A stretch of DNA of 64,000 bases from Gracilinanus agilis (Eukaryota), in NCBI RefSeq assembly GCF_016433145.1, contig NC_058131.1, positions 61,767,974 through 61,831,973 on the forward strand. Direction: 5' to 3'. The stretch's first letter is position 1. The number at the start of each line of letters is the position of its first letter. Under the pieces are notes generated by a model that did no database searches, had not been told where the DNA came from, and saw only the letters and a program-made list of their open reading frames with translations. The translations under genes and the position numbers were made by a program. Below, one piece after another: positions 1-43,893 of the stretch.

Positions 1-400
1 TAGGACTCCAAAGAGTTGCAGCTGCTCAATAACAACCAGCAAGTTTCTTTCTAAAAGGGTCAAATACAAAGAATGCTATCCATCTCCAGAGAAAAAACTG
101 TTGGAGTTAGGAACGCAGATGAAAGCATACAATTTTTCACTTGTTTATTTGGGTATATGTTTTGGGGTTTGGGTTTTATAAGATTACTGACAAAAACAAA
201 AAATAGAGAAATATGTTTTGCATGATAATATATATATATAACCCAGACTAGATTGCTTGCCAGCTCTGGGAGGGGAGAAGGAAAGAGGAAGGGAGACAAT
301 TTGGATCATATAACTTCAGAAAACTTATGGGGAAATTTGTTATTTCATGTAATAGGTAAAAAATAAAATGTAAAAAAATTAAAAGGTCAAATATAGATAT
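1..400 (+). mobile_element. LINE-1 3' end fragment
   Basis: Similar to the L1 3' tails at 5085-5735 and 24130-24970; A-rich end. Confidence 0.75.
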
Positions 401-10960: not shown

Positions 10961-12536
10961 ACTTTCCTGTCTAATAGCCTTCTTAATTGGACTCCCTGCC
11001 TCATCTCTCACAATTCCAATTCCTCCTCCATTTAGTTGCCAAAATTATTTTCCTAAAATGTGGGTCTGACCTTGCTACGCTTCTTAAACTCCAGGGGTTC
11101 CCTATTACTCCTAAGACCAAATAAAAAATCCTCCTTTTGATATTTAAAGTCCTTTAAAACCTAGTTCCTTCCTACTTTTCTAACCTTATTTTGCTACCCC
11201 CCCTTTCTATAACCTAAGATGCAGTTATGTTGGCCTACTTGCTAGGTTCTACACACAGCAATCTATCTCCTACTCTCCTCACTGACTTCCCCTATGCCTA
11301 GAATGTTCCTCATCTCCACCTGACTGTCCTGGTTTTTTTCAAGACTCACCAAATCTCACCTTCTATAGAAGCTGATACTTTAAAGCACATCAAGTACTTT
11401 CCTTCTTGAAATTACCTTCCTTTTATATATTGTATCATTGTCTATATACATAGTTCCTTCACATATTGGCTTGACTGAATTATAATGTGAAGGCAGGAAC
11501 ATTGTTTATATTTGCTTTTCTTTATATCCTTATCACTTCCTTAGAGTTATAAATCTAGGAAGCACTTGAATGCTGGTTGACTGACTGGTACCCTCATCAG
11601 AAATAATTGGAAACATGTAAAACCCAGTGGAATTGTACATCAGCTACGGGAGCGTGGGGGAATTTGGGGGAGAGGGAAAGAACATGAAATATGTAAGTAT
11701 GGGAAAATATTCAAAATAAAAAAATTAAATTAATATAAAATAAAAGAAAGAAAGAAAATTGGAAATAAAGTGGATTTGGAGGTAAAAAAAAATATTTTAG
11801 TCCAATTTTGGACACATTGAGTTTAAGCTCCCTGTGGAACATCCAGTAGGAAATGCCCATTGAGTAGGTGGTGCTGTGGGAATAGTGAAACTTAGTAGGG
11901 AAAGAATAGGGCTGGATGTACAGGGTGACCTCCCCTTCTTCTCCACCCAAATTTGCAGTTTTAGGCTATTAAAGCTTAAAACTGCTCTTAGACTTTTGGG
12001 ACACCTTGCATAATAGATTTGGGAGTCAATTCAAGGAGAGATCATTAAATCCATAGGAGCTGATGAAGTCACCAAGTAAGAGAGTATAGAAATAAAGACC
12101 TCAGAACTCAGACTTGAGGAACACCTCTAGTTTTATCTATCTAGAGGTGTGATATGGATATGTTCCAGAAAAGAATACTAAGAAGAAGACAGGAGAACCA
12201 AATCTCTAGAAGGAAAGATATATTCAACAGTGAGATTTGAAAGGATGAGAATTGGAGAAAAGTCATTTGATTTAGCAATTAATGTATTGTTGATAACTTT
12301 ATTTGAATGGTGACGTTAAAGTTTAATATCTACAGGTTTAACAACAAGCCAATCTGGCTTTAGCTATACCTCAGAGGACCTGAGTTGTTCTTATGAGCTG
12401 ATAAAATCCTCAAGGAGCAGACTGAGTAGCCTTCCTTAAAGGCTTTCTTCTTACCATAGGCTGGGAACATTCAGCTGAGCACAGCTGGTCATTCCAGAAG
12501 GCTTGCTTGGTTCTCCTTAAAACCTTGAGAAAGGAA

Positions 12537-24129: not shown

Positions 24130-24970
24130 AGTTGTAAAATAAAAGGAATATCAATAAAATTTTAAATAGCAAAGAATTAGAAACTAAAGGAATGTTCCTC
24201 AATTGGGGAATGGCTGAACAAATTGTAGTATGTGATGATGATGGAATACTATTGTGCCATAAGGAATGTAAGCAGAACCAGGAAAATAGTGTACACAGTA
24301 ACAGCAATATTGTGGAATGATTGAATGTGATAGACTTTGCTACTAACAACAACATAATGATCCAGGACAAGTCTGAGGGACTTATGAAAAAGAATGTTAT
24401 CCACTTCCAGAGAAAGAACTGTTGGAGTAAGGATGCAGATGGAAGCATGTGATTTATCTCTTGTTTATTTGGGAATATGTTTTAGGGTTTTGGTTTTATT
24501 TTAAAATATTCCAGAAAAAAATACAGCTCTGTGTAGTTGTGGGAAACTTTCCTTGTGCTTTTGGGTGAAAGGGATCTTTAACTTCATATATAATAAACCT
24601 GTGACTCCATTGTACTTCAGAGAACTTTGAGCTAATAAGCTGGGCTTCCAATCTGTTTCGCTCTTTACATCTGAAGACCACCCTAGGCCACTCAGAAAAT
24701 CTCTGGTTATAGAGCAGGATCTCTATAACATATAGTATAGATAAATGGTTATTTGGTGTGGGTAGGACTAACAAATGGGGGAATCATGAAAGGGCTTACA
24801 AAAATGAATAACAGGGAAACATGTTTTGCATGATAAAACATGTATAACCCGATTGAATTGCTTTACCTCTGAAGGGGTTGAGGAAAAAATAGGAGGGAGA
24901 TAATTTGGATTATATAACTTTTGAAAACTCATATGGAAATTTGTTATTAAAATAATAAATAATAAAAATG
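24130..24970 (+). mobile_element. LINE-1 3' fragment, interrupted at about 24500-24795 by a templated insertion
   Basis: Both flanks are collinear with the L1 tail at 120-340. Confidence 0.8.
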
Positions 24971-25159
24971 TAAATATACAGAGGAAAGAAAAAAGTCAGA
25001 CAGAGTCTGAGGAACAGGACAATTTTATTACTACCTTGTTAACATTACTATAAATTATTTATATAATATTCATATAAATATATACTATTCATATAAATTA
25101 ATATGAATTAATATAGATATATAATGTTAATATAAATAAAATTTTAAAGCTATGCAAAA

Positions 25160-25355
25160 GGGGACTCAGTGAATAGAAAGCCTGGTCTGAAAGTCAGGAG
25201 GACCTAGGTTCAAATCTGATATCTGATACTTCCTAGCTGTGTGACCCTGGGCAAGACACTTAAGCCCCACTGCCTAGCCCTTAGCTCTCTTCTGACTTGG
25301 AATTGATATTTAGCATCAAATCTAAAGCAAAAGGTAAGGTTTGTTTGTTTTTTAA
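25160..25355 (+). mobile_element. SINE-1_Mdo-like SINE in the inverted-repeat spacer
   Basis: Head/core/tail recognisable. Confidence 0.75.
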
Positions 25356-25479
25356 AGCTTTTGCAAAAGAAATTTACTATCTCCGGTACAATCTTTGATT
25401 GTTTGTTTTTGGGTATTTGAATGAGTTTGCTGCTGGTTTAAGATTAAAATAATAAAAAATAAAATATTCCAGAAAAAAA

Positions 25480-25840
25480 CAACCAAATAACCCACCTCAA
25501 GCCAAATAAGAAATTGTGCTGGATCCCCATATCTTTACAATAAAATACAAACTCCTCTTCATGCCATTCAAAGCCCTTTACACTCTGGTTCCAGACTATC
25601 TTTCTAAGCTGATGACCTATTTGTTCATCCACTCTGCACTCCAAACCAAACTGGGCTCCTTGCTGCTCAACATTTTCCATACAATCTCCCACCTTTGTGC
25701 CTTTACCCAATCTTTCCCAATGCCTTCTCTACCCCTTTACCTCCTGAGACTTTAAGCTCCCTTCAAAGTTCAGCTCAAGTGCCACTTCCTTCAAATGCCC
25801 TTTCATGATTCCCCCATTTGTTAGTCCTACCCACACCAAA
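25480..25840 (+). mobile_element. LINE-2 fragment crossing the left boundary of the right inverted-repeat arm
   Basis: cttcaaagttcagctcaagtgccacttccttcaaatgccctttcatgattccccc is an L2 motif and is continuous across 25797. Confidence 0.6.
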
Positions 25841-26619
25841 TAACCATTTATCTATACTATATGTTATAGAGATCCTGCTCTATAACCAGAGATTTTCTGA
25901 GTGGCCTAGGGTGGTCTTCGGATGTAAAGAGCGAAACAGATTGGAAGCCCAGCTTATTAGCTCAAAGTTCTCTGAAGTACAATGGAGTCACAGGTTTATT
26001 ATATATGAAGTTAAAGATCCCTTTCACCCAAAAGCACAAGGAAAGTTTCCCACAACTACACAGAGCTGTATTTTTACCATAGACAAAACAAAAGCCTTAG
26101 AAGCTTCAAGGTGTAGATAAGAACCTATGCTAAACTTTCAGCTATATTGTTATCTCCAAGCCAAGTCTGGGAATATTTTGGTAGGACGGGAAGCCCCTGA
26201 ATTTTTCAGCCTTGACTACTTTTGAGACCAAGCAGTTTATTCTAAATCTGGGCAAAATGCCCCTGCTAAGGTTTCAGCCTTAGCTTACCAAGCAGCTGCA
26301 TTCCTGACCAAAGGGGAAGAATGTTAACCTCTTGACTGCTGATTTGCTGAGAGCTCAAAGCTTTTTAGTAAGGCTATATTGCTTTTTAAGAAAAAGTGTG
26401 AATCATGACAAGGATTCACAAGAGGAATCTCAGATTTTTATTTTAGATAACCCAATCCAGACTTACTCTGATAAGAGCAGAGGGGTCAACACGTGGCTCT
26501 ACTGGGCTGGGTTGACCTTTTGATGGGGTCCAGATAAAAATATCTATTCAAGATTCTAATTTCTCTTAATGACTTCCCATAATATATGCCCTCCATTTAC
26601 TTTTCTCTAAATAGATTAT

Positions 26620-28249: not shown

Positions 28250-28432
28250 NNNNNNNNNNNNNNNNNNNNNNNNNNNNNNNNNNNNNNNNNNNNNNNNNNN
28301 NNNNNNNNNNNNNNNNNNNNNNNNNNNNNNNNNNNNNNNNNNNNNNNNNNNNNNNNNNNNNNNNNNNNNNNNNNNNNNNNNNNNNNNNNNNNNNNNNNNN
28401 NNNNNNNNNNNNNNNNNNNNNNNNNNNNNNNN
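28250..28432. other. Assembly gap (183 N)
   Basis: Run of n. Confidence 1.
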
Positions 28433-31400
28433 GTTAGAATCCTGGATCTGGAGCTGAATATCTGTGTGACTTCAGAAGAGTTACTTAATTTCAGTTGCTT
28501 CATCTATTGAATAAGGAGGTTAGTTTAGATAACTTCAAAGGCTTCTTCCAATTCTATATTCTACAGCTTAGAAGTGGAAGGAAACTGAGGCCCTGAGACT
28601 AAGTGACCTGCCTTTAAAGTCATATTGTCATTATTTAGCAAAGCTAAATTTGAACCTAGTATCACTGGCCCTCTTTTCCCCATTATACCATGCTCTGCCT
28701 TTTTATTGAATTAATTATATCATATTGTCATTTTTTATGTTCCTTTGAACGAAGAGACATTTACTTCCCTGAATAAAGTTGTTTGGGTATTTTCTCTTAG
28801 CCAGAGAAATTAAATGCAAATGAACAATCCAAAGCTCCAAGAAGACCTACCTACCTTCTGGACAACCCTGAAACGTAAGAGCAGGAGATCCCCTGGACAT
28901 CACCAGGTCTGACTCCTAGTCTGCCACCAAGAAAAAAAACTTCCCTCCATAGAATACCTGATTTCCCACCTCCCTCCATGGACCCAGTGTTTCCAGGGTA
29001 CAAGCAGACATACAAGTCCTTAGCTCCAAGATCAGATGGCTTGTTTTCCCTAGAAATCAGTGAGTTAGTGTTAGAGATCTCAACCTAAACCTTCTTGAGA
29101 TTTGATCAAATGGGCAACAAAGAAAGGAATACGATCAATTCAGTCTCCATGACCCAAGCCTCTACTCTCCTGGTCTTTGTGTGGCTAGCAGCTCTGAGTG
29201 ATAGGGCCCTGCAGTTTAGAGCCTCACAGAACAGGTTCCTATAAAACCATATTGAAATTGGGATGGGTGTGTATATGATTCAAGTGGGAGCCAACATACC
29301 AAGATAAGGGCCCTTTACAGGAGTTCTGTGTTAGGGTCAGGGAGCTCTTAGGCTGTTGCAGTCCAGGGTGATGGATTTCAAGGTAGAGGACCTGATTGTG
29401 AATCCTAACTCTACTACTTACTACCAGTGACACCTTGGATAAGTCATTTATTGTTTCTAGGGCTCAATTTCCTCATCTTTAAAAATGAAGATGTAGGACT
29501 AAATAATAATAGCTAGTATTTATTGAGTACTTTAAGATTTGCAAGGCACTTTACATATATTATTTTATTTGATTTTTTTTTTTAGATAAACAAGGCTAAG
29601 TGACTTGCCCAGGGACAAACAGCCAACTTTTGAATTCAGATCTTCCTGACTCCAAACCTAGCACTTCATCTGTTGTGCCTTTTAGCTGTCCTCTCATTCA
29701 GTTCTTACAACAATCTTGGGAAGTAGGGGAAAAAAAAATTTTACAGATGAGGAAACTGAGGCTGAGAAAGATCAAGTGACTTACTCAGGGTCTCACAACT
29801 AGTAAGTGTCTACATCAGGATCTGAATTCAGGTCTTCCTGACTCAATTTTAGGCACACTATCCACTATGCCACTTAGCTTAGATCATCTCTAAAGTCTAT
29901 TCCATATCTGGTTTCTGCCAGCATTCTTGTCTCCAGTATTGTTTATGAGGTTTGTAGGCTAGGAGGACCCCGTAGAAGTTGTAACCACAATTAGAACATT
30001 TAATGGGGAGACAGCCTTCACTTCACCAGCTTCTTGGACCTCAGAATTATAGTAGAAGCAAGGAGGTCCATAGGAACGTTAGCTCCAGCCTTCAGGGATG
30101 CTCAGCAGATAGCAGGAGCAAGGATGCTGCAGTACTGAGGCCAAAGGAACCCCAGATCATAGCAGAGTTGTGTGTATGTGTGTGTTTCCCCAGTATAGAG
30201 GCTCCAGAGAGTGCCCACTCCTTTCTCCAGCACAGAAAGCCAGTTCTTTAAAAACCATCTCAGCTAATGGACTATTGATAAATAATTAGCTTTTGTTCAT
30301 TGCATTGATCTAGGTGGGCCCATCCTCATTAGCATTTTCCCTTAGCCTAAGCTGTTATTCCTGCCCTCTTTCTCCCATGCTTTCCCCAAACAGCAAAGGG
30401 AAGCAATTTAGAGAGGGGAATCTAATGTCAGAAGACAGCCAGCCCCCCTTTTCCACCTTGGCTCTGGAGAGAAATAAAGAGCACACACATGAGGCGGCTG
30501 CCTCCAGGACAGCCCTTGCCTTCCTTAGCAACCCTGGACCACTCCACATGGGGGGATGAGGAGCACAGCCTCCCCCATCCTGCTCAGCCAAGCCTTTGTA
30601 CATCCTAGCTAGGTCTAAGGAAGGAAGGATTCACGAAATGAGCCAGGGAGGTTCCCAGGGGTACTCCTGTTTGTCAGTGGAAAATGCTGAGTTCACAGTC
30701 CCAGCCCTGGGGAGCTAGCTGCAGGCCCCAGACACACCCCTATCTATCCCTAACAGGGAATTTGTCTTCAGTTTTTCTTGTCTTTTCCCACTCAGGATAG
30801 GGCTGAATTCAGAACTGGCCATAACTGGCACCCTCCTTGCTCTTCCTTGCCCCACTCTAGCCAGATCTCTCAATGGTAGGGTCATGTCTTCTGCTTCTCT
30901 TTACCACAGTACCTGGCACAAAGACGGGTGATCAAGGCAGAAGGGACCTCATTTTATAGATAGGAAAATGGGGCACAGAGCAGGTCAGTGTTTCGATCGG
31001 GCTCTCACAGGGAGTAAGTAATAGATCTGGCATTAGAAGTCAAGGTCTTTCTCTTTTTCCCCTTAAACTCTGGACTTTAATCTCCTTGGAGTCCTGCCCA
31101 TAGGCACCCTGAGCAGCTAAGTGCCCTCAGCAGGTGGTCAAAGCTGCACACCTCAGGCATCCTTAGCTAGACTTATCTTTGAGCCAGGCAGCCCCAGGTA
31201 TGGGTCAGACAGATGCCCCAGACAGGTCATAGACCAGATGCTCCAGATCAGGGGCCAGTTTCTAAGGCTAGGACTGGAAGGAAACAACCTTTAGTACAAA
31301 TATAGATCTTTTTTTAATGAAACCAGAACAGACAGAGACTGAACAGAGGGAGGGAAGCATGGGACAGCATCCGGTGCCCATACAAGGGTCCTGAGGTCTT

Positions 31401-31933
31401 GTGAAACTCAGGGATCTCTAAATAGATGCAGGAATTATGGGAGAACAGGGCCTGGGGATAGAAAGGCAAGCCCGCGATTTGGAGAGGTCTCTGCAGCTCC
31501 CTAACCTGCTGCTGGAGTCCCAGTCAGAGCTGCCCTTGGTAAGTGCCTCCCTCCAACATAGCTGAGGGGTTATGGAACCCCACAGAACATGGGGAATCCT
31601 GTTCTCCCCTCTAAGTGGACACCGAGAAAAGGGATATGGGACCCCAGGATTTTCTTTCCCTTGAGAGTGCCAAGAGCCCTGGGAGTTATTCTTTTATACC
31701 TTTTCCTTGGATTTGGGAAGGCAAGGAGAAGATGGGAATCTCCTCTAGACCAGGAGAACCCAGAACCAAGTGGAGAAAAGGAAGGGCTGGACTCAAGAAA
31801 GGGAATTTGGTCTTTTTAGCCCCAGTGCTTTGCACATGATAGATGTTTAATCCAGTCTTTGGATTCAATTGGAGTAAGTCTCCAGCTTCTCCTTAGGGAT
31901 GGGCTGTGAGGGTCAGGCTCTCTCTTTGGTTGG

Positions 31934-32234
31934 CTAAGCCAAGGGCCCCAGGATGCAGGCGAGGGCCAGTGCTGCAGCCAACAATGCTGGGGCTGGGGCT
32001 GGAGCAGGGGAGGCAGGAGCAGAAGGCCCTTGCAAGGTCTCCTGATTGGTCTCCTCACTGGCTGCACCCCTAACATTGCTTGGGGGAAAGGGCCGAGAGC
32101 TGCACAGGTCATGTAGGTTGCCCTGGTATTGGACCTTGCGGAATTCCTGCTGCAGTGACTCCCAGATGGCAGTTGCCTCTTGTGGGCAGTTGGCCAGGAC
32201 CCCACTGGCACAGGTCTGAAAGTTTTCCCATGAC
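31934..32234 (-). CDS. NRN1L: NRN1L exon 3 (coding part, 301 nt including TAG), ending in a GPI-anchor-type hydrophobic tail
   Basis: SWENFQTCASGVLANCPQEATAIWESLQQEFRKVQYQGNLHDLC...ETNQETLQ...ALLAAALALACILGPLA*; the joined CDS is 546 nt = 181 aa with six core Cys. Confidence 0.93.
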
Positions 32235-32885
32235 CTAGAAGGAGATAAGGAGAGTCAGGAGTGAGCCTTGCCAGAAGGGCTGGAGCAGGGGACAGTTACT
32301 ATACTCTATACAAGGAGGAGTGACAAACAGAAGCTGAGAATCACAGACAGGGAAGGAGTTAGCTCACCTGGGAACAGTTGAGGCTTGGGAATGGGGGAAG
32401 CACTGAGAATGAAATGACATAGGATAGAGGTAGAAATGGAGTCAGCTGTGTGAAGCTGATTTTTGTGACCCCAATATTACTGCCCTTTCAAGGCCTCAGA
32501 GTTTTAGTCCATTCAGAATTTGCTGGTGGATTAGATTCTTAATCCCCACTCCCACCCCCAATCTTTTTTGCTTTGCCTACTGGTGCCCTGTTTCCAAGAA
32601 AACATGATGCTACTCTACCCTTTGTATTCTCCCCCAAGTCTGTGCTATCTGCAACCAAAAGATTTTCATCATTCTGCATTCCTTACCCAAAGCTTCGTGG
32701 TTTTCCCCTTTATAAACCCTGTATTAACTCAAGCAAAATGGGTTTCTCTCCTTGTATCCAAAACATGAGGGATCCCACTCCAGAGTCCTCTGATCTATCC
32801 AAATAAAATGTTTATTGCATTTTTCATGACTCAGTTTCTTTAATTTGATAGTAGTGAAAGACTTGACCAAGACCTTGGCTCTCAC

Positions 32886-33054
32886 CTGCAGATAGATTCG
32901 AGTTCCGGGGGTGTGAGGCCAGCCCCCTTGTCAGGCTGCGACTGCCCACTCTGGGCCATACTGTTCCCAAGGCTCATTAGACAGTCAGCAAAGCCCTTGT
33001 ACATAGTATCACATCTGTTATAGGTGGCAGCAGTCCCAGGACCAGGGGCCAGGA
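32886..33054 (-). CDS. NRN1L: NRN1L exon 2 (169 nt)
   Basis: LAPGPGTAATYNRCDTMYKGFADCLMSLGNSMAQ...ELESIC, the neuritin motif CD-x3-GF-x-DCL-x2-LG; polypyrimidine-cag acceptor, gtgag donor. Not in the ORF track. Confidence 0.93.
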
Positions 33055-35199
33055 CTGCACAGAACGAGAAAGAAAAAAAGCATTAATCTGGGCGCACACC
33101 CTTCACTCCCCAGGGAGCCCTGTTTACCAGTGCAACAGAACCCAAGGGAAGCAGCTCAGCTAGTCTGTGGCAGTGCCACTGGTGACCTGCTTAGGGAAGT
33201 AGTTTCACAAACCCCTGAGTCCCCCTTTCAATTCAACCAACATTTATTAATCATTTGCTATGTGCATGCACTGTGCTAGGAGTGCTGGGATTGGTATGAA
33301 GATAAAACTGAGCAGACTCTTCTTTTAAGGGGCTGACAAAGAAATGGAAGAACCCCTGTGCAGCAGCACATACACCCCTCAAAATAAGCAGAGTTTAGTG
33401 GAGGCAAGGAAGAAATCCAACAAGCTTTAAGAAAAATTTAGGTGCAAATCACTTTTAGTTGGGGAGAATGGTTCTTAGAAATGTCAGAGAGGCATCAAAT
33501 CTGAGATCTGAAGGAAAAGAATGTCAGAAGAATAGATTCTAGGGAACTGGGGCAGCCTTCCAGGAGAGGCCCCTAAAACCTACATGGAAGGCCATGGGAC
33601 TGAGAATTGCCTGGAACAGTGAGGGGGAAGGCCATTTCTTTGAGTCTCCCCACCTGTATGGGGAGAGAAGGGTGGCAAAAAAACAGGACCAAATCATCCT
33701 CCTTTCATCTTCTTACATCTGTTCCTGCTCCTTGTACTAAGTCTGAGTTCTTTCCCCAAGTAACTAAGAGGAACATGGTCTATGAGGCCCAGAGGGAGCC
33801 TTGGGATAGCTTCTGCCTAAAGAGGCAATCAAAATCTCCATATCACAATCCTCCCACCCTCAGGTCCTCATGCAATGGGTTGAAGCAGGCCAGGAGTGGG
33901 TCTAGTACCTCCAAGCAGGTGACCAATCCCCCTTCTAGTTTGAGTGTGCAAAAGATACCACCAAGTCCAGGAGTAGAGAGAAGACAGCATTTTCGACAAA
34001 GGACCACAGACCTTAATTTTGAGCCCTAGTCCAGGTTCGGCCAGGCCTCCTTCTTCCTCCAATGTCCTCCTCCTCTAGGGCTAGCTTTATCAACTCCTCA
34101 CTCCTTTTCTGCCCTCTTCCTCCAGAGGGGCTAGGGTGGGGAAAGGACTGAGTGCATTTCTTAAAAGGGGTCATCCAGTTCCACCCCAAGCAACCACTGA
34201 GGTTCTGTGGAGCACAGGCTGCCTATATACTTTTTTCTAAGACTCCTACTCTAGAATATATTCCTGACCCTGCTCAGGAATACCATTACTCAACTCTTTG
34301 AGGCCACTGAGGGGGCTGAGCTGGGGAAGGTCATCAATCCATCTGTTGTCAGCAATGGATAGAAGCCTGGGAGTGCAGTTCCCCACAAAACTGTATTCCC
34401 TCCCAAGCTTGGTTCCAGAGGAGAGATGAGAAAATCCCTCCCTACTTTGCAGTAGTGGCAGACTAGAGGTCCAAAACATTGCATATACTGTGGAGCCCTT
34501 TAATGCGTTGTTGATTAGTTTTGCAGAATCCTCTCCTTACAAAGGATGGCTAGCTGGGGTCGGGGAGGAGAGGGATATTTGGTGATGTTAAAACAAAAAG
34601 GTAGGAATTTTAAAAAAACTATTTAACCCGCCCCCTCCACACCCATAACCCCTGAGCACCAACTCCTCCATCTCTATTTCAACGCCAGCATCCAGTCCCC
34701 AAAGCTTCGATGCTCCCCCCCAACCCTCCTCTCTCCAGATTGCCAGTCAAAGTTGGGGGAGGAGGTGTGCGTTTGGGTCTGCGTAATGATCTTGGGGGCC
34801 AGTAGAGGTTCCTCTCCTGAAAGAGAAGAGCGGCACCTTCCTCCATTCTTAGGGATCAATTCAGGTTTTAGTCTGGGGAACAGAGGAAGAGTGGTCATGC
34901 GAGTGATGGGAGTTGTTGAAAACTGGATGAGGTCAGGACAAAAGGGAGATCCAGGAGCTTAGATCCTCTTCCCTTCCACACCTTTTAAAGCCGTCGTCTG
35001 AGTGAGAGCCCTGAACTTTGGCGGGGAGGGGGTGGAGCAGGGACCGAGGACCTTTAAAGGCAAAGTCTGCGGGATGCAAGATGATAGGACCATAAATTTG
35101 GATATTAAAGAGACCTAGTCTGATCCCCCATTTTACAGATGAGGAAACTGAGACCCAAAGAGGTTGTGACTCGCCCGACATCACACAGTAGCACGTTTG

Positions 35200-36050
35200 G
35201 GGTTTGAATTCCAGTTCAGCACTCCTTTCCAAGACGGGATCAGATTTTCTGGGCAGGGAAGCGATTGGGGAGTGGCGAGTGCCCCGACCTCTCATATCTC
35301 CCAGTCCCTCCTACACCCCCCAGAGTCCCCCTCCTCCCTAAGAACAAGTCTGGCACCGGAGGACAAGGAAAGGGGGACCCCTTTCCCAGTGCTCGGGCTC
35401 ATGGTTCCCCAGGACTTACAAAGCTGCAGGAGCAGAAATCCGGGGAAAGGGAGTGGTCTCCAGCAGCAGCGGCGGCGGCGGCAGCAGGAGCGCATTGTCC
35501 CGGGCCACGGCGGTGCCGGGAGCCCGCTCCCACCTCAGTCCCAAAGGCTCCGGAGCGCGAGTGCCAGCCGGTGAGCTGGGGCTAGGGAAGCACCACGGCC
35601 CCGCCCCTGCCTGCCTCGAGCCCCGCCTCTCCCCGCCTCCTCCTGCTCCTCCCCGAATCTCCCCATTCCACACTCTCTTCTACCAGGCTTCTTCTGCACC
35701 CCCACGCCATCCCTCTGGCTCTCTGCTTCCGCTACTCGATTGCCCAAGGGAGTCCACTTTCGAACCCAGGCGTCCACAGCACCGCCCCGGGGGATGTTAA
35801 CATGCGACCGCTCCAGCCCCATCCCGGTCTCAGAAGTCAATTGGGGGGGCCCCAGCCCAACGGAGATCAAAGCCGCCCCCCAGCCCCACCGCCAGCAAGT
35901 CACTGTCGATTTGTCCCCCCCCCTTCCCCCGCAGGCGCAGATGTCCAGGTCCATGACTCCGGCTCCAGAGGAGGTCGAAGCTGTTCTTCCTCCACTAGGC
36001 CCCAAGTCCCTCTGGCCCACAGGAAAGCTCGGCCCTCCATTAAGTGCCAG
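35200..36050 (-). promoter_or_regulatory. NRN1L: NRN1L CpG-rich promoter / first exon region
   Basis: Elevated GC/CpG, GC boxes (ccccgcccc near 35600), directly upstream of and around the NRN1L ATG. Confidence 0.75.
35420..35495 (-). CDS. NRN1L: NRN1L (neuritin 1-like / CPG15-2) exon 1, signal-peptide start (76 nt)
   Basis: MRSCCRRRRCCWRPLPFPGFLLLQL resembles the recalled human NRN1L N-terminus (MMRCCRRRCCC...); donor T|gtaag. Confidence 0.9.
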
Positions 36051-36502
36051 CAGCTCATCTGGGGATTGGCCGCAGGGGCTGCTTGCCCCAGTGGGATGGA
36101 AAATGGAGCCATGGGGTTCTGGGCTCTACCCACTGCTAACTGGCAGGTGCTAGGTGCCAGAGGTTGGCTCCCACCTCAGAAGGCCTGGGTGATGCCTTCT
36201 AAACATTCCCCATTAAGTGCACTAATGTTCCAACTGCTCCAGCTGGAGTAGAGGGATGGGGGGGACCCGGTCTGCACAAAGCCAAGAAAGAAAAAGGCCC
36301 AAGAGTGAGAGGCACGTGGCTGGGACCTGAAGTCCTGCTGGAGTCCAGGACATGGCCCTCTCCCCCTCTCCCCCTCTGAGCTTCCAGCAGGAGGAGGGAA
36401 GGGAACTCCCTCAGGGCCTGCCCACCTCAGGAAACAGCCTGGCTAAAGCATAGCAGGGAGAGAAACACAGACACCCTAGCAGAGGGTTTTATCTAAAAAG
36501 CA

Positions 36503-36508
36503 TTTAAT
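36503..36508 (-). terminator. EDC4: Probable EDC4 poly(A) signal ATTAAA
   Basis: tttaat on plus, in an AT-rich patch about 455 nt after the stop codon and just before the GC-rich NRN1L upstream region. Confidence 0.6.
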
Positions 36509-36961
36509 TGAATGTATTTTCAATGTTTCTCAAAAACAGAAAGATCCAAATGGGAGGTAAAAAGGAACATGTAAAATTCAACTCAAGTTATAATAGTTGA
36601 TTCTGGAAACATGCTCCCTAGCCGATGGAGCCTGGATTCCCCAACCTCCCAGAGCTGGAAGCCATAGAGCCCCTTCTGCCAGAGGAGCCAACCTGAGGGA
36701 ACAGCAGGGAGACCCCTTCAGCTCTGCAGGCATCACCAGAGCTGAACCCCCAAGGTAAGTCAGGGTCAACCAGCTCTCAGCTCCTCTGGCAGAGTGGAGA
36801 GGAGAGGGCGGCAGAGTTCTGGCTTTGGACTTTTCTTTATCACCAAGTTCCAGACAAAGAAACTCAGTATTCACCGGGTTCTCAAGGCCTGGAGTCATCA
36901 TGGTGGATACCACAAGCCCTCCTCCCTCCTCTGGTGGTTTGCCAAAGGTGCCTGTGTCCAC

Positions 36962-37154
36962 CTAGTTGAGACCAGGGACAGCCAGGCCCTGCAACATGAT
37001 GGTGAGACGCCTGGCAGCCTTGCAGAGAGAGTTGTGGGGCTCAGCCTGTAAGAACTGGAATAACTTCTGCCGCACCTGGGCCATGACTGAGCCCATGTGG
37101 TCCCTGGTGATAGGGTCACTGTGGTCCAGGTGCATTACGGCTTCCTCCAAGTAG
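36962..37154 (-). CDS. EDC4: EDC4 exon 29 (coding part, 193 nt including TAG)
   Basis: YLEEAVMHLDHSDPITRDHMGSVMAQVRQKLFQFLQAEPHNSLCKAARRLTIMLQGLAVPGLN*; tag acceptor. Confidence 0.96.
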
Positions 37155-37448
37155 CTATGAGTGAAAAAGAAATGCTGGCATTCAGAGGTATGGCAAAGTC
37201 CCCTGGCAGTGCAAGCCTCTGGAATCCCATGTTCTGTGAAGATAAATCTCTAATGGGGAAGGGAGGATTATAACCTTCTATGAGCTGTAGGTCCCCTAAA
37301 CTGAGGGTAGGGGTGTAGGAGACCACAGACCTGGCAACCTTTGCTACAGATTACTGGGATGAGGTAAGGAATCCGGTTCACTTTGTTCCTGAGCCAGTGC
37401 CCAAAGAGGGACCTGACCTCCACCCTCATCTGCTCTGCCCACACTAAC

Positions 37449-37612
37449 CTGAATTTGAGTTCCGTGCGGGTTCCCAGGTCAGAGGAGAGCTGCTGGATGA
37501 GGGAGAGCAGGACAGGCTGGGACAGAGGACAAGGTGGCTGGCCAAACACCTGCTGGGGGTCCACAGTCTCACATACAAAGAGCACCAGGTTTAGGTCAGC
37601 TGCTGTCAGGGC
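37449..37612 (-). CDS. EDC4: EDC4 exon 28 (164 nt)
   Basis: ALTAADLNLVLFVCETVDPQQVFGQPPCPLSQPVLLSLIQQLSSDLGTRTELKF; cag / gttag. Confidence 0.96.
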
Positions 37613-37877
37613 CTGAGGAGGTAGGATGGGCTAGTGAGAAGAGATGATGGGAAAAACTTTGGGAGAAGACATGTGAGGAAAGAATATTGGCAGAAGTGGA
37701 AAAAAGGGTCAGGGGGTACTTGAAGATGAGCAAGAGCCGGGAGGTGATGAAAGAGGCAGGAGAGGATGCTGGACCAGGAAAGAAAAGCCCCGAGAGCTCA
37801 ACCCAGGTCTTCCTGCTCCCCCTGCTGGCAGACTGGCAGCACAGTGCTCAGCCAGGAATTTGGCTAGGTTATGGTAC

Positions 37878-38097
37878 CTGTTGGAAAGCCTGGTTGAGGT
37901 GGCCCTGCTGCAACATCTGCAAGATATGTGCCTGCTGGGCCTGGCAGTCGAGGTGGGCAGCTGGGATGGGTGTGCCAGCAGCAGAACGCATGGCCTGCAT
38001 GATGCTAGAAGTAACTGCTGCCTGTTGCTCCTTCATGGCCAGACTTACTTCCCCCTTTATGATGCGCTGCACCTGGGACAGGATTGACTCCTGCATG
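37878..38097 (-). CDS. EDC4: EDC4 exon 27 (220 nt)
   Basis: MQESILSQVQRIIKGEVSLAMKEQQAAVTSSIMQAMRSAAGTP...GHLNQAFQQ; tag / gtacc. Confidence 0.96.
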
Positions 38098-38159
38098 CTA
38101 GAAGAGGAATAAGGCTGAAGCACTGACCCAGCTCTTTTATAACATAAGATCATCTAGTC

Positions 38160-38359
38160 CAGTGATGGGCAAACTATAGCGGGCCAGATGCAGCCCCCTG
38201 AAATGTTCTATCTGGTCATGCGACATTATTCCTAATCTGACAAATACAATGAGTAGGATACAATACAATGAAACTTTGGAAGAGATGCCTTAGAAACAGA
38301 CTAACAGATGAGCATTTCCTTTCCTTTGGCCCCCTCTTTAAAAAGTTTGCCCATCACTG
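38160..38359. mobile_element. Non-autonomous hAT (Charlie-type) DNA transposon / MITE, 200 bp, in EDC4 intron 26
   Basis: Perfect 16-bp TIRs CAGTGATGGGCAAACT (38160-38175 and 38344-38359) and a perfect 8-bp TSD ATCTAGTC (38152-38159 and 38360-38367). Confidence 0.92.
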
Positions 38360-38389
38360 ATCTAGTCCAAATTTTGTTTGCATCAAATT

Positions 38390-39420
38390 AAAGTTTTTAT
38401 GTAAACAAAACCAATGGAACTAAAATTAGAAGGAAAAGTTATCTAGGAAAAAAAATCTCTGCAACATGATCCTCTGAGAAAAGTCTTGTTTCCAAGATGT
38501 GTAAGGAATTGATTTAACATTTAAGAATAAGAGCCCTTCTTCAATTGATAAAAGTTACTGTTTACATAAAATAATATAAAATGTTTTCAGAGGAAGAAAT
38601 CTAAATTAACAACAAAATGAAAAACTGCTCCAGATTACTACTAACTAGAAGAATGCAAATTAAAGCAACTGTGAGATTGTACCTCAGACTAATGAAATTG
38701 TCAAAGATGACTTGCAACAAAAAAGGAATATGATTGGTGGAATTGTATGGAAAACAGGAACATTAATGAAGGTAATATTGACAAAAAGTTACTAAACCAT
38801 GCATATATCCTCTATCCCAGAAATATTGAAGAAAGAGGAAAAGTACCTATATGCAGAGAAATATTTTTAAGTAGTCCTTTTTGCAGTGACAAAAACATTG
38901 GAAACTGAGGGGGATGCCCATCATTTGAGAGAATGGCTGAACAAGTTAAGGGCATGGTTTCAAAGGAGAGGGGGAAGACTCATATGAACTGATGCAGAAT
39001 GGAATGAATAGAAGAATTTTAAAAGTAACAAAAACATCATAAAGACAAATAACTTTCAAAGGCTTATTCTGGTCAATGAAATGATTCCCCACGATTCCTG
39101 AGGGTCCTGAAGAACTATGCTAGAGAGGTGATAGATTCATGATGCAGAAAGAAATACACATTTTTGGACATGGTTAATGTACTGATTTGTTTTGTCTATT
39201 TTAAAAAATGAGTAACCAGTTAATTATACAGATTAATAGTTCTTGAACATACAAGCTCCAGAGGAGCAATTGGGTCTTTAAATGTCAAATGAATTTTTAC
39301 CCTTATATCCAGATGGACATAATGTATTTTAGGTTTTTGAAATTTTTTTTTAAACTGGAGGCAGAGGAGGGAGAGAAATTAAATGCTTGTTAATTGAGAA
39401 AAAAGATAAGAGTTAAAAAA
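38390..39420 (+). mobile_element. Old LINE-1 ORF2-end / 3' fragments, antisense in EDC4 intron 26
   Basis: A-rich degenerate L1 ORF2-end motifs (gaatgcaaattaaagcaactgtgag..., gatgcccatcatttgagagaatggctgaacaag). Confidence 0.65.
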
Positions 39421-40017
39421 GATTTAGCCAAAACATCCCATTTTACAGGTAAGGAAAAGGGAATGAGCATTTATGAAGTGTTTAATTTACTATATATGTA
39501 CTAGGTTCTATGCTAATAAGCACTTTAAAAATATCTCATTTGATCTTCACAGCCCAGGAAGGCAAATGCTATTAATCTCCCCATTTCATAGTTAAGTGAA
39601 CTGAGGCACACAGATTTGCCCGGGGTCATCCAACTATAAGGAACTGAGCATGGACTTGAACTCTAGTCCTCTTGATCCATGATGCTACCAACTGCCTCCC
39701 AGAGAAGGGAGATAGCAAGTGTCCCAAATCACCCAGTTATTTTTCCACTGAACTGGGAGATGAACAAATGTAAATGACTTCCTATCCTAGACAACAGACC
39801 CCCTGGGTTGGCTCCACCCCTGATGTCCAGGCCCTGCCAACTAGCTGTGTGAATGTGGGCAAATCATTGCACTTCTTCTTTGGGGTTCCTCAACCTTAAG
39901 CCCATCTCTATTAGCAAAAGAAAAGAATCCTTTCCTTGTGCCATGCCTGTGGGCCACTGTACAATGCAATGTTAGAACCCTCTTCTCTTTCCATGGGGTC
40001 GCCTATCTCCAACTCAC

Positions 40018-40204
40018 TTGCTCACAGCAATGTGGAGTTGGTGCTGGACCTCAGCCCGCACGCTGCTGCTCACAGTGGCTGCCATCTGTTCTGTGGCACT
40101 CTGCAAGGTGCCCACCAGTCCTCGAAGCTGAGCTAGCACCGGCTCTCGTGCTTCCTGTTCTCTCGCCTTCCGACTCTTCATGTGGTTCTCTAACTGCTGC
40201 AGGT
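40018..40204 (-). CDS. EDC4: EDC4 exon 26 (187 nt)
   Basis: LQQLENHMKSRKAREQEAREPVLAQLRGLVGTLQSATEQMAATV...HIAVS; cag / gtgag. Confidence 0.95.
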
Positions 40205-40363
40205 CTGAAGTTGGGGAGGGCAGAAGAGGGGGAGCTCAGTTATTGCTGAGACTCTAGACTTTAAGGACAAATTCCTAAAGGGGGGGGAGGGGAACTAAAT
40301 AAGGAAGGGAAGGAGCTTCCCCTCAGTGTAGAGGGCCAAGATCTGCATAAGAATATCACTCAC

Positions 40364-40529
40364 ATTCCTGGGTACCAAGCTTGAAGCTGTCATTGATCTG
40401 CTGGAACATGGCCTGGCAGCTCTTCTCAAAAGTGGGCAGCACAATGCTCTGGAAGGCCTCTCGGTAGGCAGCCTGCATAGGCCCTTGAAGCGTATCTGTA
40501 GTGGCACGGGCAATCGTGTCGGTCAGGTT
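40364..40529 (-). CDS. EDC4: EDC4 exon 25 (166 nt)
   Basis: NLTDTIARATTDTLQGPMQAAYREAFQSIVLPTFEKSCQAMFQQINDSFKLGTQE; tag / gtgag. Confidence 0.95.
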
Positions 40530-40667
40530 CTAAAGAAAATAATGGAAAACAGCACCAATATGTGAATTCCATGAGAACCCTCACCTCCATTTCAGAGGAA
40601 ACAACACCCCTATCACCACCTGTAGATATATTCAAAGATCTGAGACTCCCTGAAACAGGCTCCATAC

Positions 40668-40783
40668 CTTGGACTTGACCAGCTTGGTGACATTCTCCTT
40701 TAGGGTGCCTTCCACTGCTGTCAATTTGGCTGCCACAGTACCACTCAGCTGGTTTGTCACTGGCTCCAAGCTTTTGGAAACAC
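40668..40783 (-). CDS. EDC4: EDC4 exon 24 (116 nt)
   Basis: VSKSLEPVTNQLSGTVAAKLTAVEGTLKENVTKLVKSK; tag / gtatgg. Confidence 0.95.
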
Positions 40784-40949
40784 CTATGCCAGAGTAGAAA
40801 TAATAAAGGGATGGTTTAGGCTGAGATTCTTTCCTAGGGACAATGGACTGAATTGGTAGGTTGGATAAGAAAAGAAGGGGCCCCAGGGTTGCTAAATTCT
40901 TTTGCTACTGTACCTCCCACATTATGCTCACAAATATAATTTTACTCAC

Positions 40950-41105
40950 ACTGGGGAACCGTTTTCTTCATCTCTTCTCTAACTGTGCGCTCCAGTCGGC
41001 CTGCTACAGCTGAGGACAAGGCCTGGGACAACTGCTGTGACAAGTGTTCCTGCAGCTGCCCACTACGCTGCTGCCCCTCAGCCAGGGCCCGCTCTAACCG
41101 TCTCT
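40950..41105 (-). CDS. EDC4: EDC4 exon 23 (156 nt)
   Basis: RRLERALAEGQQRSGQLQEHLSQQLSQALSSAVAGRLERTVREEMKKTVPQ; cag / gtgag. Confidence 0.95.
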
Positions 41106-41461
41106 CTGAATTGCTGGCTAAGGAAATCTGCAGGCCCAAGTAGGTCAAGGAACTTCTACCACTATCCCTCCACCTGCTTCTAGCAAAGACTAGAAGAAGC
41201 CCACATGAGCTCTGGGCCCTTGGACATTCCCCAAATAACCTTGGGCTCTATAAAACACAAAGATTATGATTCCCCTTTTACAAAGGAGGAGTACTGAGGC
41301 TCCAAATCAAAAAGACTTGGCCTGAGTATCACAGCTAGTACTCACAGCTAAATCTCCAGAGCTCTTTCTTTGCTATGACAATGCTAGCAATTCTTAACAG
41401 ACACCCTGAGCTGGCCCTGGGGGTCTGTAGCCAGGCCCCCTCACACTGCCCTCAAGGATAC

Positions 41462-41639
41462 GCTCATGTTCTTGTCGAGACTCCAGAACTCTCTCCACAT
41501 GGCCCATGATTGAGCTCTGCACTGAGTCCAGCTGGTCTGTTAGCCGCTGTAGTAGCTCTGCATGACTCTGTCGGAGCTCGGCAAGCTCCCGCTGCTGTCC
41601 TCGAACCACAGCCAGCCATTCTTCAGGGGGTTCTGCTGC
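41462..41639 (-). CDS. EDC4: EDC4 exon 22 (178 nt)
   Basis: AAEPPEEWLAVVRGQQRELAELRQSHAELLQRL...ESRQEHE; cag / gtatcc. Confidence 0.94.
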
Positions 41640-41864
41640 CTGGCATAGGGACATGCATATCACTCTGGGTTGAGGGCACCATGCCCTCTCCTGACTGCTC
41701 CACCTCAGGCAAGACCTAGGATGTCTCAAAACAGAGCCCTGCTTGCTTGAAAGACAGCCTTTCAAGACTTGCCAGAGGGGAGAGAAGAGTCTTGGCTTGA
41801 GGGGCTATCTAGTTATGAAGGGAAGGAGAAAAGAGTCTAGTAAGAGGGAGAACTTTGAGCTCAC

Positions 41865-41901
41865 CTGGTGTTCTACCAGTCGGGGACCCTGGGACAAGTC
41901 T
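41865..41901 (-). CDS. EDC4: EDC4 exon 21 (37 nt)
   Basis: DLSQGPRLVEHQ; cag / gtgag; phases match the neighbouring exons. Confidence 0.88.
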
Positions 41902-42051
41902 CTGCAACAAGAAAAGAATCTAATGAGATTTGATGGCGTGGGACCTTACAGGAAAAGGGTGGGAAAAGTAGGAAAAACAAGAGGCCACGGGAATAGGACA
42001 GGATTTTTGATCCCCTCAGGGCCCTACCTGCTGCCCTATGGCTCCACCTAC

Positions 42052-42204
42052 CCATCATCCTTCTTGCCCTTTCTCTTCAGCTTGGGTGAGGCCCTGGGAG
42101 ACCCCTTGGTTTTCCAGTCCTTCACTGGCAGTCGTGGGGCCGTTGCTTTGGCAACGAAGCCCCCTGAGGTTGAGGCCAAGCTGGCCACCTCATCATCATG
42201 GTCA
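42052..42204 (-). CDS. EDC4: EDC4 exon 20 (153 nt)
   Basis: DHDDEVASLASTSGGF...KDWKTKGSPRASPKLKRKGKKDD; cag / gtagg. Confidence 0.95.
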
Positions 42205-42433
42205 CTGTTGGGGTGGGAGAAGGCAGTGAACACCTACTCACATTTATACCTCCCTGCCCACTCCACCCAATGGCCCCCATGGACAAGATAGGGATGGTCA
42301 GGACACTTGCCAAACAAGGAGATTTGGGGCTCAGGACCCAGCACTGAAGCCCTGAATTAGGCTGATATGGATGGGATGGAGAAGGGGGGATTCCTGGGTG
42401 GTTGGAGCAGTGGAGGGGTTGGGGGTGGAGCAC

Positions 42434-42535
42434 CTCTGCTCAGCGCTGGCATCCTGACTATCCTGTTGTAGCAGATGGTAGGCGTGCCGGTGGTAGGAAG
42501 AGCCCTTGTGTTTCTCCTGAACATCATCCCTGGGA
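42434..42535 (-). CDS. EDC4: EDC4 exon 19 (102 nt)
   Basis: PRDDVQEKHKGSSYHRHAYHLLQQDSQDASAEQ; cag / gtgctc (weak donor). Confidence 0.92.
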
Positions 42536-42879
42536 CTGTGTATAATTTTGAGGGTGAGGGAGATGATGAGAAAGGCCAGAGAACAAAGGACCATTCCCAC
42601 ACCCATTCACAAGATCCTGTGCTAGGGGAACAAGGAGATACAGGACAGAAGCCCCCCACCCCACCTTCCTAGGGCTGTGAAGTTTTCATATTTGTACTGG
42701 TGGCAGTGTGGGGAAGAAGTGCCAAGGGTATGAGTGCTGCCTGCCATGACTGTTCAAGAACAGCATGACTAAGACTGTAATCCCAGAAACTAGTAAAGGC
42801 AGAGACTAGAGCTAAGAAGAAGAGAAAGAACAGGAAGAGTGAGGTAGAGAGGGGTAGCCCACTCCACCTTGGCCTTTAC

Positions 42880-43313
42880 CTGTCAGCCAGGCTGTTGCGG
42901 GTTTCCCGGGTGATATCAGGTGCAGCAGGCCAGGCCTTACTGTCAGAAGCACCAGTCTCCTGGCTCAGCGCCGTCTCCAGTAGGGAAGGTGTACTCCGCC
43001 TCTCCCCCTCCCCAGTACTCCCATCCAGACTGTGCTGGGGGCCATGCTCAGGGCCAGGCCGGGGCCGGGGGGATAGCAGGTGGAGGGCCGAGGCAGCAGA
43101 TGCCATGCTGTCAGGCTCAAGGCCCTCAGGAGCAGTGGTGCCAAAGCCTCGGGATAGAGCCTCTGAGGCAATCTCAGGGATGTCCTGGGATAGGGCTGTG
43201 GAGGCTGAGGAGATGACGTCGGGGGAGCGGGCCCGGGTCGGAGAGGCCTGTGGCACCACCAGGGGCTCTACCTCCTGCAGCTCCAGGGACAGTGATGGGT
43301 TCCCTTGTGGGAC
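42880..43313 (-). CDS. EDC4: EDC4 exon 18 (434 nt)
   Basis: VPQGNPSLSLELQEVEP...RSPDVISSASTALSQDIPEIASEALSRGFG...NSLAD; cag / gtaaa. Confidence 0.95.
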
Positions 43314-43396
43314 CTGCCCAGAGAGCTCCCACTTAACCACTGCCCAGCTCCCTCCTAACCCCCAGTCATTCCACTTCCCAGAACCTGCTAACCCAC

Positions 43397-43550
43397 CTGG
43401 CTGGGCCCCTTAGTAGCTAGTTTATCAGAGAGGCCTGGGATGAGGACGCTGTGACCGCGGGGACTAGCCTGAAGGCTGCTACTGCTGCTGCTCAGGGTCA
43501 GACTGCTGTCTAGCTGCAGCTTGGGACTCAGGGTCAGCTCCTCAGGTGGC
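43397..43550 (-). CDS. EDC4: EDC4 exon 17 (154 nt)
   Basis: PPEELTLSPKLQLDSSLTLSSSSSSLQASPRG...KGPSQ; cag / gtggg. Confidence 0.93.
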
Positions 43551-43650
43551 CTGAATTAGGGGAAAAAGGCCGATCTTGTACAGAAGTCCTCTAACCCCTA
43601 ACTCTGCAACCCTTTATGCCTCTTTCCAATTCTAGGATTCTTCCTCTCAC

Positions 43651-43739: not shown

Positions 43740-43893
43740 CTATGGAGACATGAGGATGGCGGAACAATTGGCTTGAGAGTCCCAAAGCCCAGAAAGGCTT
43801 GGCATTCTGTGACTTAGTACAATTTATTCATCTTTTCTGGACTTTACAATGAAGGCAGCACTGAACTAGCCCCTCCCCTGCCCAGGGATATAC

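What the first reader, a model, noticed from the sequence alone, without database searches (positions are those of the whole stretch)
24502..26075. Recent two-step templated insertion creating a 279-bp near-perfect inverted repeat
Seen: 24517-24795 is the reverse complement of 25797-26075 with one mismatch, a CpG-type change (TG at 24672-73 versus CG at 25919-20). The right arm is the donor, because L2 sequence runs continuously across its boundary. The left arm interrupts an L1 3' tail whose two halves are collinear with the L1 tail at 120-340, with roughly 8-12 bp missing. The left junction also carries a 20-mer, TAAAATATTCCAGAAAAAAA (24502-24521), that exactly copies 25460-25479 in direct orientation and overlaps the inverted arm by a 5-bp AAAAA microhomology. 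Established: small deletion + local templated inserts + microhomology-guided switching is the signature of polymerase-theta end joining or FoSTeS/MMBIR. Inference: a break in the L1 was repaired by copying first from about 1 kb downstream and then, inverted, from about 1.3-1.6 kb downstream. The event is very young and could be polymorphic. The arms could extrude a cruciform, or form a long dsRNA (ADAR substrate) if transcribed.
Basis: partly seen in the sequence, partly recalled or inferred. Interest (0 to 1): 0.75.

Follow-up and report, generated by a model that had tools for sequence, protein, structure and literature searches.

The report
Young inverted templated insertion in L1
A dead L1 element in this opossum-like genome carries a 294-base patch copied from two spots about 1 to 1.6 kb downstream, one copied forwards and one backwards. 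It is a clean, young scar of a known kind of error-prone DNA break repair, and it leaves a near-perfect 279-base inverted repeat with no sign of function.

Summary
Bases 24517-24795 are the reverse complement of 25797-26075: 279 nt with one mismatch (T at 24672 versus C, a CpG-type change). A 20-mer at 24502-24521 is an exact direct copy of 25460-25479 and overlaps the arm by AAAAA.

The 294-nt insert splits a LINE 3' tail. The two halves of that tail are collinear with another copy at window 68-374, and about 7 bp are lost.

It is the only long near-identical repeat in the 64-kb window. It has no target-site duplication, no terminal repeats and no poly-A, and it lies 2.2 kb from the nearest assembly gap.

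The best reading is a real germline templated insertion made by microhomology-mediated template switching at a break. Junction microhomologies are 0, 5 and 1 nt. That matches the pattern reported for two-fragment inverted insertions at yeast breaks.

Both templates lie on the strand that would survive as the 3' overhang of the right break end. One resected intermediate could therefore explain both copies. The polymerase and the order of steps cannot be read from the sequence.

No read-level check was possible. L2 continuity across the donor boundary could not be shown. This is a new, unusually long member of a known kind.

The parts
24389..24501 (+). Left half of the interrupted LINE (L1-type) 3' tail. 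Its last clearly homologous base is 24499; the TT at 24500-24501 is unassigned.
   Evidence: 85.7% identical to window 68-179. An ORF2 C-terminal-like motif (MEYYCAIRN) lies upstream at 24232-24324 (recognised from my own knowledge, not confirmed by Pfam or PDB searches).
24502..24521 (+). 20-nt direct copy of 25460-25479, the first templated fragment.
   Evidence: Exact match, and the only two occurrences in the window at up to 3 mismatches. It also aligns 15/20 without gaps to the LINE comparator at 177-196.
24517..24521 (.). AAAAA microhomology shared by the end of the 20-mer and the start of the inverted arm. This is the junction between the two templated fragments.
   Evidence: Read directly from the sequence. 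Source 1 ends in A7 and source 2 (reverse complement) starts with A5; the junction has A7.
24517..24795 (-). Left arm: the derived, inverted copy of 25797-26075. The C at 24795 could equally be the first base of the resumed LINE tail (1-nt microhomology).
   Evidence: 278/279 complementary. It interrupts the LINE tail.
24672..24673 (+). The only difference between the arms: TG here, CG in the donor (25919-25920).
   Evidence: The left arm has 1 CpG and the right arm has 2.
24796..24936 (+). Right half of the interrupted LINE tail. Homology continues to about 24974, inside the stretch I kept out of search tools.
   Evidence: Aligns to window 187-325 and beyond, collinear with the left half.
25159..25342 (+). 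MIR-like SINE copy inside the spacer. It is not part of the event.
   Evidence: 14 related copies in the window at 69-80% identity.
25460..25479 (+). Donor of the 20-mer, 958 bp downstream of its copy.
25521..25795 (+). Old dispersed repeat (L2-like by eye) that abuts the donor arm.
   Evidence: Homologous to window 11096-11384 (nhmmer E 9e-4; alignment z 7.8).
25797..26075 (+). Right arm: the inferred donor of the inverted fragment.
   Evidence: It is the only other copy in the window. Donor status follows from the left copy being the one that interrupts a repeat.
68..374 (+). Uninterrupted copy of the same LINE tail, used as the 'empty site' comparator.

Best explanation
This is most likely a real, evolutionarily young germline repair scar. 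A break in the 3' tail of a dead LINE, near 24500, was sealed with DNA synthesised on two nearby templates. One fragment is 20 nt copied directly from 25460-25479. The other is 279 nt copied in reverse from 26075 back to 25797. The two fragments are joined at an A5/T5 microhomology, and about 7 bp of the target were lost.

Shown by the sequence: the insertion, its two sources, their orientations, the three junctions and the single later CpG-type change.

Inferred: both fragments require the minus strand to the right of the break as template. After 5'-3' resection of the right break end, that is exactly the strand left as a 3' overhang. The simplest scheme is therefore:
1. The right end folds back on its own overhang and copies 279 nt (in cis, with 1-nt priming).
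2. The left end copies 20 nt from the same overhang (in trans, perhaps helped by 15/20 similarity to the LINE sequence at the break).
3. The two new 3' ends anneal through A5/T5 and are filled in.

Serial replicative template switching (FoSTeS/MMBIR), or capture of a pre-formed chimeric fragment by end joining, would give the same product. The polymerase is unknown.

The result is a neutral inverted repeat. It would matter only if transcribed, when it could form a 279-bp RNA duplex.
For: - Anatomy is exact and far beyond chance.
- The LINE flanks are collinear with an intact copy, so the left arm is the insertion.
- There is no target-site duplication, terminal inverted repeat or poly-A at either copy.
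- The nearest N run is at 28250, so both arms lie inside one contig of at least 28 kb.
- The single arm difference is a TG/CG change, the commonest real mutation.
- Junction microhomologies are 0, 5 and 1 nt. In yeast two-fragment inverted insertions from one locus, the outer junctions have a median of 2 bp (range 0-4) and the junction between the inverted fragments a median of 6 bp (range 2-11) (PMC11724301).
- Templated extension in cis (snap-back) and in trans are documented modes of polymerase theta (PMC4912351). Synthesis-dependent MMEJ is described in PMC2943611.
- About 100 inverted templated insertions of at least 25 bp occur as germline variants per human (PMC8421209).
- Only 0.34% of local 20-mers match the LINE comparator at the gap as well as the copied 20-mer does. 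This is consistent with template choice guided by imperfect homology.
- First-stage notes from this scan list many similar 90-370-bp local inverted copies in the same genome. One was followed up as real and old (s1-153903). These are leads only, not evidence.
Against: - The insertion has therefore not been verified in the animal.
- The tract (279 nt) and the template distance (0.96-1.58 kb) are far beyond typical polymerase-theta inserts and short template-switch events. In great apes the median is 12 nt and the maximum 128 (PMC7954356). MMBIR-type inserts were searched only within 100 bp of their template (PMC8421209).
- Two of the three junctions have 0-1 nt of microhomology.
- Only one LINE copy covers the junction, so the size of the deletion and the native sequence at the break are uncertain by several bp.
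- Native context of the donor arm was not demonstrated.
Confidence: 0.72

Rival explanations
1. Assembly or cloning artefact: a chimeric clone or read, or a consensus error, placed an inverted copy of downstream sequence inside the LINE tail. The animal's DNA has no insertion.
For: No read-level check could be run. Near-perfect identity is also what an artefact would give. Run X3 holds only 0.79 of the sampled words of 24300-26300, and which words are missing is unknown.
Against: The LINE resumes collinearly after exactly 294 nt, with a small deletion and a microhomology join. That is unlike a chimeric join. Both junctions are less than 300 bp apart and 3.4 kb or more from the nearest gap. The arms differ at one CpG-type site. 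No other such duplicate exists in the window.
Confidence: 0.1
2. One-step version: the 20-mer at 24502-24521 is native LINE sequence and only the inverted arm (about 274 nt) was inserted. The identical 20-mer at 25460-25479 has a separate origin.
For: The 20-mer aligns 15/20 without gaps to the LINE comparator at 177-196, within the 75-86% identity seen between these two LINE copies.
Against: It needs a second event to explain a sharp-edged 20/20 identity 958 bp away in sequence that is otherwise unrelated to the LINE. It also needs the coincidence that the arm was inserted exactly at the end of that identity. And it makes the comparator's positions 187-196 count twice, because the right flank aligns there at 22/29.
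Confidence: 0.1
3. Two independent insertions of a young mobile element, in opposite orientations, 1 kb apart.
For: The genome outside the window could not be searched, so the copy number of the 279-nt segment is unknown.
Against: There is no target-site duplication, terminal repeat or poly-A at either copy, and the target lost bases instead of duplicating them. No third copy exists in 64 kb. This reading does not explain the adjoining 20-mer copied from between the two arms.
Confidence: 0.03
4. An old inverted duplication whose arms are kept nearly identical by gene conversion, so the event is not young.
For: Arms of 279 bp that are 1 kb apart can in principle exchange sequence. A single difference cannot separate youth from homogenisation.
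Against: Identity is uniform from end to end and stops sharply at all four boundaries. The 20-mer, too short to be converted, is also still perfect.
Confidence: 0.05

Closest known systems
Complex templated insertions at double-strand breaks: two fragments from one locus in inverted orientation (yeast; Yu et al. 2024, PMC11724301)
   Same: Two fragments come from one nearby locus in opposite orientations. Microhomology is longer between the fragments (5 nt here; median 6 in yeast) than at the outer junctions (0 and 1 nt here; median 2 in yeast).
   Different: The switch points are about 590 nt apart here, against 2-119 bp in yeast. The fragment sizes are very unequal (20 and 279 nt). The donor lies on the same chromosome only 1 kb away. 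This is a germline event in a mammal, not an induced break in mutant yeast.
Polymerase-theta-mediated end joining / synthesis-dependent MMEJ with snap-back (cis) and trans templated synthesis (PMC4912351, PMC2943611, PMC5068794)
   Same: A small deletion plus locally templated insert, an inverted copy as expected from snap-back on the break's own 3' overhang, and a final join at a microhomology.
   Different: The tract is about ten times longer and the templates far more distant than usual. Two junctions have almost no microhomology. The enzyme cannot be tested.
Short-range template-switch mutations, four-point model (PMC5453318, PMC7954356), and MMBIR-type templated insertions (PMC8421209)
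   Same: A reverse-complement copy of nearby sequence replaces a few bases and creates a perfect hairpin-forming repeat de novo.
   Different: Those events have a median of 12 nt and a maximum of 128 nt in great apes, and their templates lie within about 100 bp. This event has an extra direct fragment, so it needs three switches rather than two.

Membership tests
Templated insertion by microhomology-mediated break repair (TMEJ / SD-MMEJ / MMBIR class) | The inserted bases are an exact copy of sequence near the junction | tested here: met
   20/20 and 278/279 identity to sites 0.96 and 1.3-1.6 kb downstream.
Templated insertion by microhomology-mediated break repair (TMEJ / SD-MMEJ / MMBIR class) | Microhomology at the switch points | tested here: inconclusive
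   5 nt at the fragment-fragment junction, 1 nt at the right junction and 0 nt at the left junction. The native target sequence is known from only one diverged copy.
Templated insertion by microhomology-mediated break repair (TMEJ / SD-MMEJ / MMBIR class) | Loss of a few target bases, and no target-site duplication | tested here: met
   Comparator positions 180-186 are absent and no flanking duplication is present.
Polymerase theta specifically | Dependence on POLQ; typical inserts of a few to a few tens of nt templated close to the break | tested here: not met
   The size and distance part was tested: 279 nt from 1.3-1.6 kb away is outside the usual range. Enzyme dependence is not testable with these tools.
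Four-point template-switch mutation (Löytynoja and Goldman) | A single reverse-complement fragment between two switches, at short range | tested here: not met
   An additional direct 20-nt fragment is present. The length of 279 nt exceeds the maximum of 128 reported for great apes.
Two-fragment inverted insertion captured at a break (PMC11724301) | Two fragments from one locus, in inverted orientation, with longer microhomology between them than at the ends | tested here: met
   The sources are 317 nt apart and in opposite orientation, with 5 nt against 0-1 nt of microhomology (paper).
Retroposon or transposon insertion (target-primed reverse transcription, twin priming, or cut-and-paste) | Target-site duplication, a poly-A tail at one junction or terminal inverted repeats, and multiple genomic copies | tested here: not met
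   None of these is present at either copy. Genome-wide copy number was not testable.
Assembly artefact | No independent reads span the junctions | not testable with these tools
Exact look-up of junction ORFs and a metagenome scan were blank, which is uninformative.

The most novel reading that the evidence does not exclude
This locus could be one instance of an unusually common class in this opossum genome: long (about 90-370 bp), local (under 3 kb), mostly inverted templated insertions that land mainly in retroposon sequence. That would imply a lineage-specific bias toward long-tract fold-back synthesis at breaks, and a steady source of long duplex-forming repeats. First-stage notes list ten or more such cases in about 626 windows. 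They are almost all unchecked, and no comparison with other mammals exists.
Probability: 0.15. Interest if true: 0.65.

Novelty: new member of a known kind. Interest (0 to 1): 0.35.

Why it matters
On its own, this is a textbook-clean natural example of a two-template repair scar with all junctions still readable. Most published germline cases are much shorter, so it is a useful illustration.

It shows how a 279-bp perfect inverted repeat can arise in one step from unique sequence. If the locus is transcribed, it would form a duplex of about -535 kcal/mol, the kind of substrate that RNA-editing and RNA-sensing enzymes see.

It would matter more if a census confirmed that such long local inverted insertions are unusually frequent in marsupials.

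Tried and rejected
- **Read check.** The look-up of sequencing runs gave three runs: X3 at 0.79 of the sampled words, X1 and X2 at 0.05.
- **Other routes to independent contigs.** Exact look-up of seven ORFs that span the junctions and donor boundaries found none in the collection. A scan of metagenome contigs for the left junction found nothing. All three blanks are uninformative.
- **L2 continuity across 25796/25797.** nhmmer and shuffled-control alignments against the only in-window homologue (11096-11689) are significant up to 25795 and not inside the arm. A motif search found no further comparators.
- **L1 identity by database.** Pfam and PDB searches of ORF pieces from this element and from the related one at 2-5.7 kb gave nothing. 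The label rests on the repeated A-rich tail and on an ORF2 C-terminal-like motif that I recognise from my own knowledge.
- **Gene context.** Pfam and PDB searches of the long ORFs in the GC-rich blocks gave nothing. Whether the locus is intronic or transcribed is unknown.
- **Retrotransposition readings** (target-primed reverse transcription from the T5 run at 26071-26075, or twin priming). Rejected: there is no poly-A/T at the expected junction and no target-site duplication.
- **Inversion reading.** Rejected: the spacer keeps the right LINE half collinear with the left half.
- **A 69-nt inverted pair at 29416-29484 / 29739-29807**. It proved to be two old MIR-like SINEs, not a second event.

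Full report
**Observation**

Bases 24517-24795 and 25797-26075 are reverse complements over 279 nt, separated by 1001 nt. They differ at one position: T at 24672 against G at 25920, so the left arm reads TG where the right arm reads CG. Complementarity stops abruptly at all four arm ends. The blastn E-value is 1e-142. It is the only repeat longer than 40 nt at 93% identity or more in the 64-kb window; the others are simple TA-type runs.

The 20-mer at 24502-24521 is an exact direct copy of 25460-25479. These are its only two occurrences in the window even with three mismatches allowed, against 0.04 expected from shuffles. It ends in seven A's. The last five are also the first five bases of the inverted arm, so the two copied pieces share a 5-nt microhomology.

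**The recipient**

The insert (24502-24795, 294 nt) sits in the 3' tail of a LINE.
- The left flank, 24389-24499, is 85.7% identical to window 68-179.
- The right flank, from 24795, is about 75% identical to window 187-374, on the same strand and in the same order.

The two flanks are therefore halves of one element, and the left arm is the derived copy. In the comparator's coordinates, positions 180-186 (7 bp) have no counterpart. The TT at 24500-24501 is unassigned, and the C at 24795 fits both the arm and the resumed LINE.

The 'L1' label rests on two things: the repeated A-rich tail, and an ORF2 C-terminal-like motif just upstream that I recognise from my own knowledge. Pfam and PDB searches did not confirm it.

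**The donor**

An old dispersed repeat at 25521-25795 is homologous to window 11096-11384 (nhmmer E 9e-4; alignment z 7.8). The similarity is not significant inside the arm (z 0.2-0.5). By eye, a motif typical of L2/MIR 3' ends spans 25797, but that is memory, not a test.

Donor status of the right arm follows more safely from two facts: the left copy is the one that interrupts a repeat, and no third copy exists in the window.

**What it is not**

- Neither copy has a target-site duplication, terminal inverted repeats or a poly-A/T at the position that target-primed reverse transcription would require. The target lost bases rather than duplicating them.
- It is not an inversion. The spacer keeps the right LINE half collinear with the left half.
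- The nearest assembly gaps are at 28250-28432 and 50210-50222, so both arms lie well inside one contig.

The copied 20-mer aligns without gaps, 15 of 20, to the LINE comparator at 177-196. That is exactly where the LINE is interrupted. Only 0.34% of local 20-mers and 2.1% of shuffles do as well. There are two readings:
- The broken LINE end found this template through imperfect homology. 'Microhomeology' is reported at such junctions in PMC8421209.
- The 20-mer is native LINE sequence and only the arm was inserted.

The second reading needs a separate event to explain a sharp-edged 20/20 identity inside otherwise unrelated sequence 958 bp away. It also needs the arm to have landed exactly at the end of that identity. 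And it uses comparator positions 187-196 twice. I rate it at about 0.1.

**Mechanism**

All of the following is inference from the product.

Both copied fragments need the same template strand, the minus strand to the right of the break. After 5'-3' resection, that strand is what remains as the 3' overhang of the right break end. One intermediate therefore suffices:
1. The right end folds back on its own overhang and copies 25797 to 26075, with 1-nt priming.
2. The left end copies 25460-25479 from the same overhang.
3. The two new 3' ends anneal through A5/T5 and are filled in.

Templated extension in cis (snap-back) and in trans are documented for polymerase theta (PMC4912351). Synthesis-dependent MMEJ is the matching repair model (PMC2943611).

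The junction pattern here is 0, 5 and 1 nt. It matches what Yu et al. found for two-fragment inverted insertions from one locus at yeast breaks. There the outer junctions have a median of 2 bp (range 0-4) and the junction between the inverted fragments a median of 6 bp (range 2-11). Those authors proposed microhomology-primed synthesis for the inversion and end joining for the capture (PMC11724301).

Serial replicative switching (FoSTeS/MMBIR) gives the same product. The sequence cannot tell these models apart or name the polymerase.

In size, the event lies far outside the usual range. Template-switch events in great apes have a median of 12 nt and a maximum of 128 nt (PMC7954356). MMBIR-type inserts were searched only within 100 bp of their template (PMC8421209).

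**Age**

One difference in 279 nt gives about 0.8 My at 2.2e-9 per site per year, with a Poisson range of 0.02-4.5 My (the rate is my assumption). The change sits at one of the donor's two CpG sites, and the donor keeps CG. That fits deamination in the copy after the event. It could also be a copying error by a low-fidelity polymerase (my own knowledge), in which case the event could be younger still. Uniform identity with sharp ends, and a still-perfect 20-mer, argue against an old repeat kept uniform by gene conversion.

**Consequences**

As RNA, the arms pair over all 279 positions, with a G·U pair at the mismatch on the plus-strand transcript. The arm duplex is -534.7 kcal/mol, and the pairing is kept in the fold of the whole 1559-nt stretch. 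Whether the locus is transcribed is unknown, because I could not identify any gene in the window. Cruciform extrusion is unlikely with a 1001-nt spacer (my own knowledge).

**What could not be done**

- The decisive check, reads across the junctions, failed. The tool itself says this is no evidence of anything. The call was still counted.
- Exact look-ups of junction-spanning ORFs and one metagenome scan were blank, which is uninformative.
- Misassembly is therefore judged unlikely only from internal features: a collinear flank restored after exactly 294 nt, a microhomology join, a CpG-type difference between the arms, and distance from any gap.

**Context from this scan**

These are leads only. 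First-stage notes list many other 90-370-bp local, mostly inverted templated copies in the same genome. One was followed up as a real, old and decaying scar in an L1 (s1-153903). Another was read as a by-product of an L1-driven insertion (s1-185007). This suggests the class may be common here, but I tested none of those loci.

**Verdict**

The locus is a new, unusually long and clean member of a known kind of repair scar, with no evidence of function.

Noticed in passing
window 24497-24508: The left junction creates a perfect 12-nt palindrome (TATTTTAAAATA) centred on 24502/24503, where the LINE flank meets the 20-mer. In addition, 24494-24502 is complementary to 25456-25464, which overlaps the start of the 20-mer's source. 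This may be chance in A/T-rich DNA, or a trace of how the left end was primed.
   Followed up: partly
window 25060-25138: An A/T-only tandem array of about four 19-nt units lies in the spacer between the arms, just after the LINE tail.
   Followed up: no
window 30000-46000 and 54900-55700: GC-rich blocks (50-56% GC) carry long ORFs open in several frames on both strands, for example 250 aa at 54930-55682. None matches Pfam or the PDB, so I could name no gene in the window.
   Followed up: partly
window 28250-28432 and 50210-50222: Two N runs of unequal length (183 and 13). They look like sized gaps of an older scaffold-style assembly. I left them untouched.
   Followed up: no
window 29416-29484 / 29739-29807: A 69-nt inverted pair at 77% identity, about 255 nt apart. 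It turned out to be two old MIR-like SINE copies in opposite orientation, not a templated event.
   Followed up: yes
I kept it out of all later searches.
   Followed up: no
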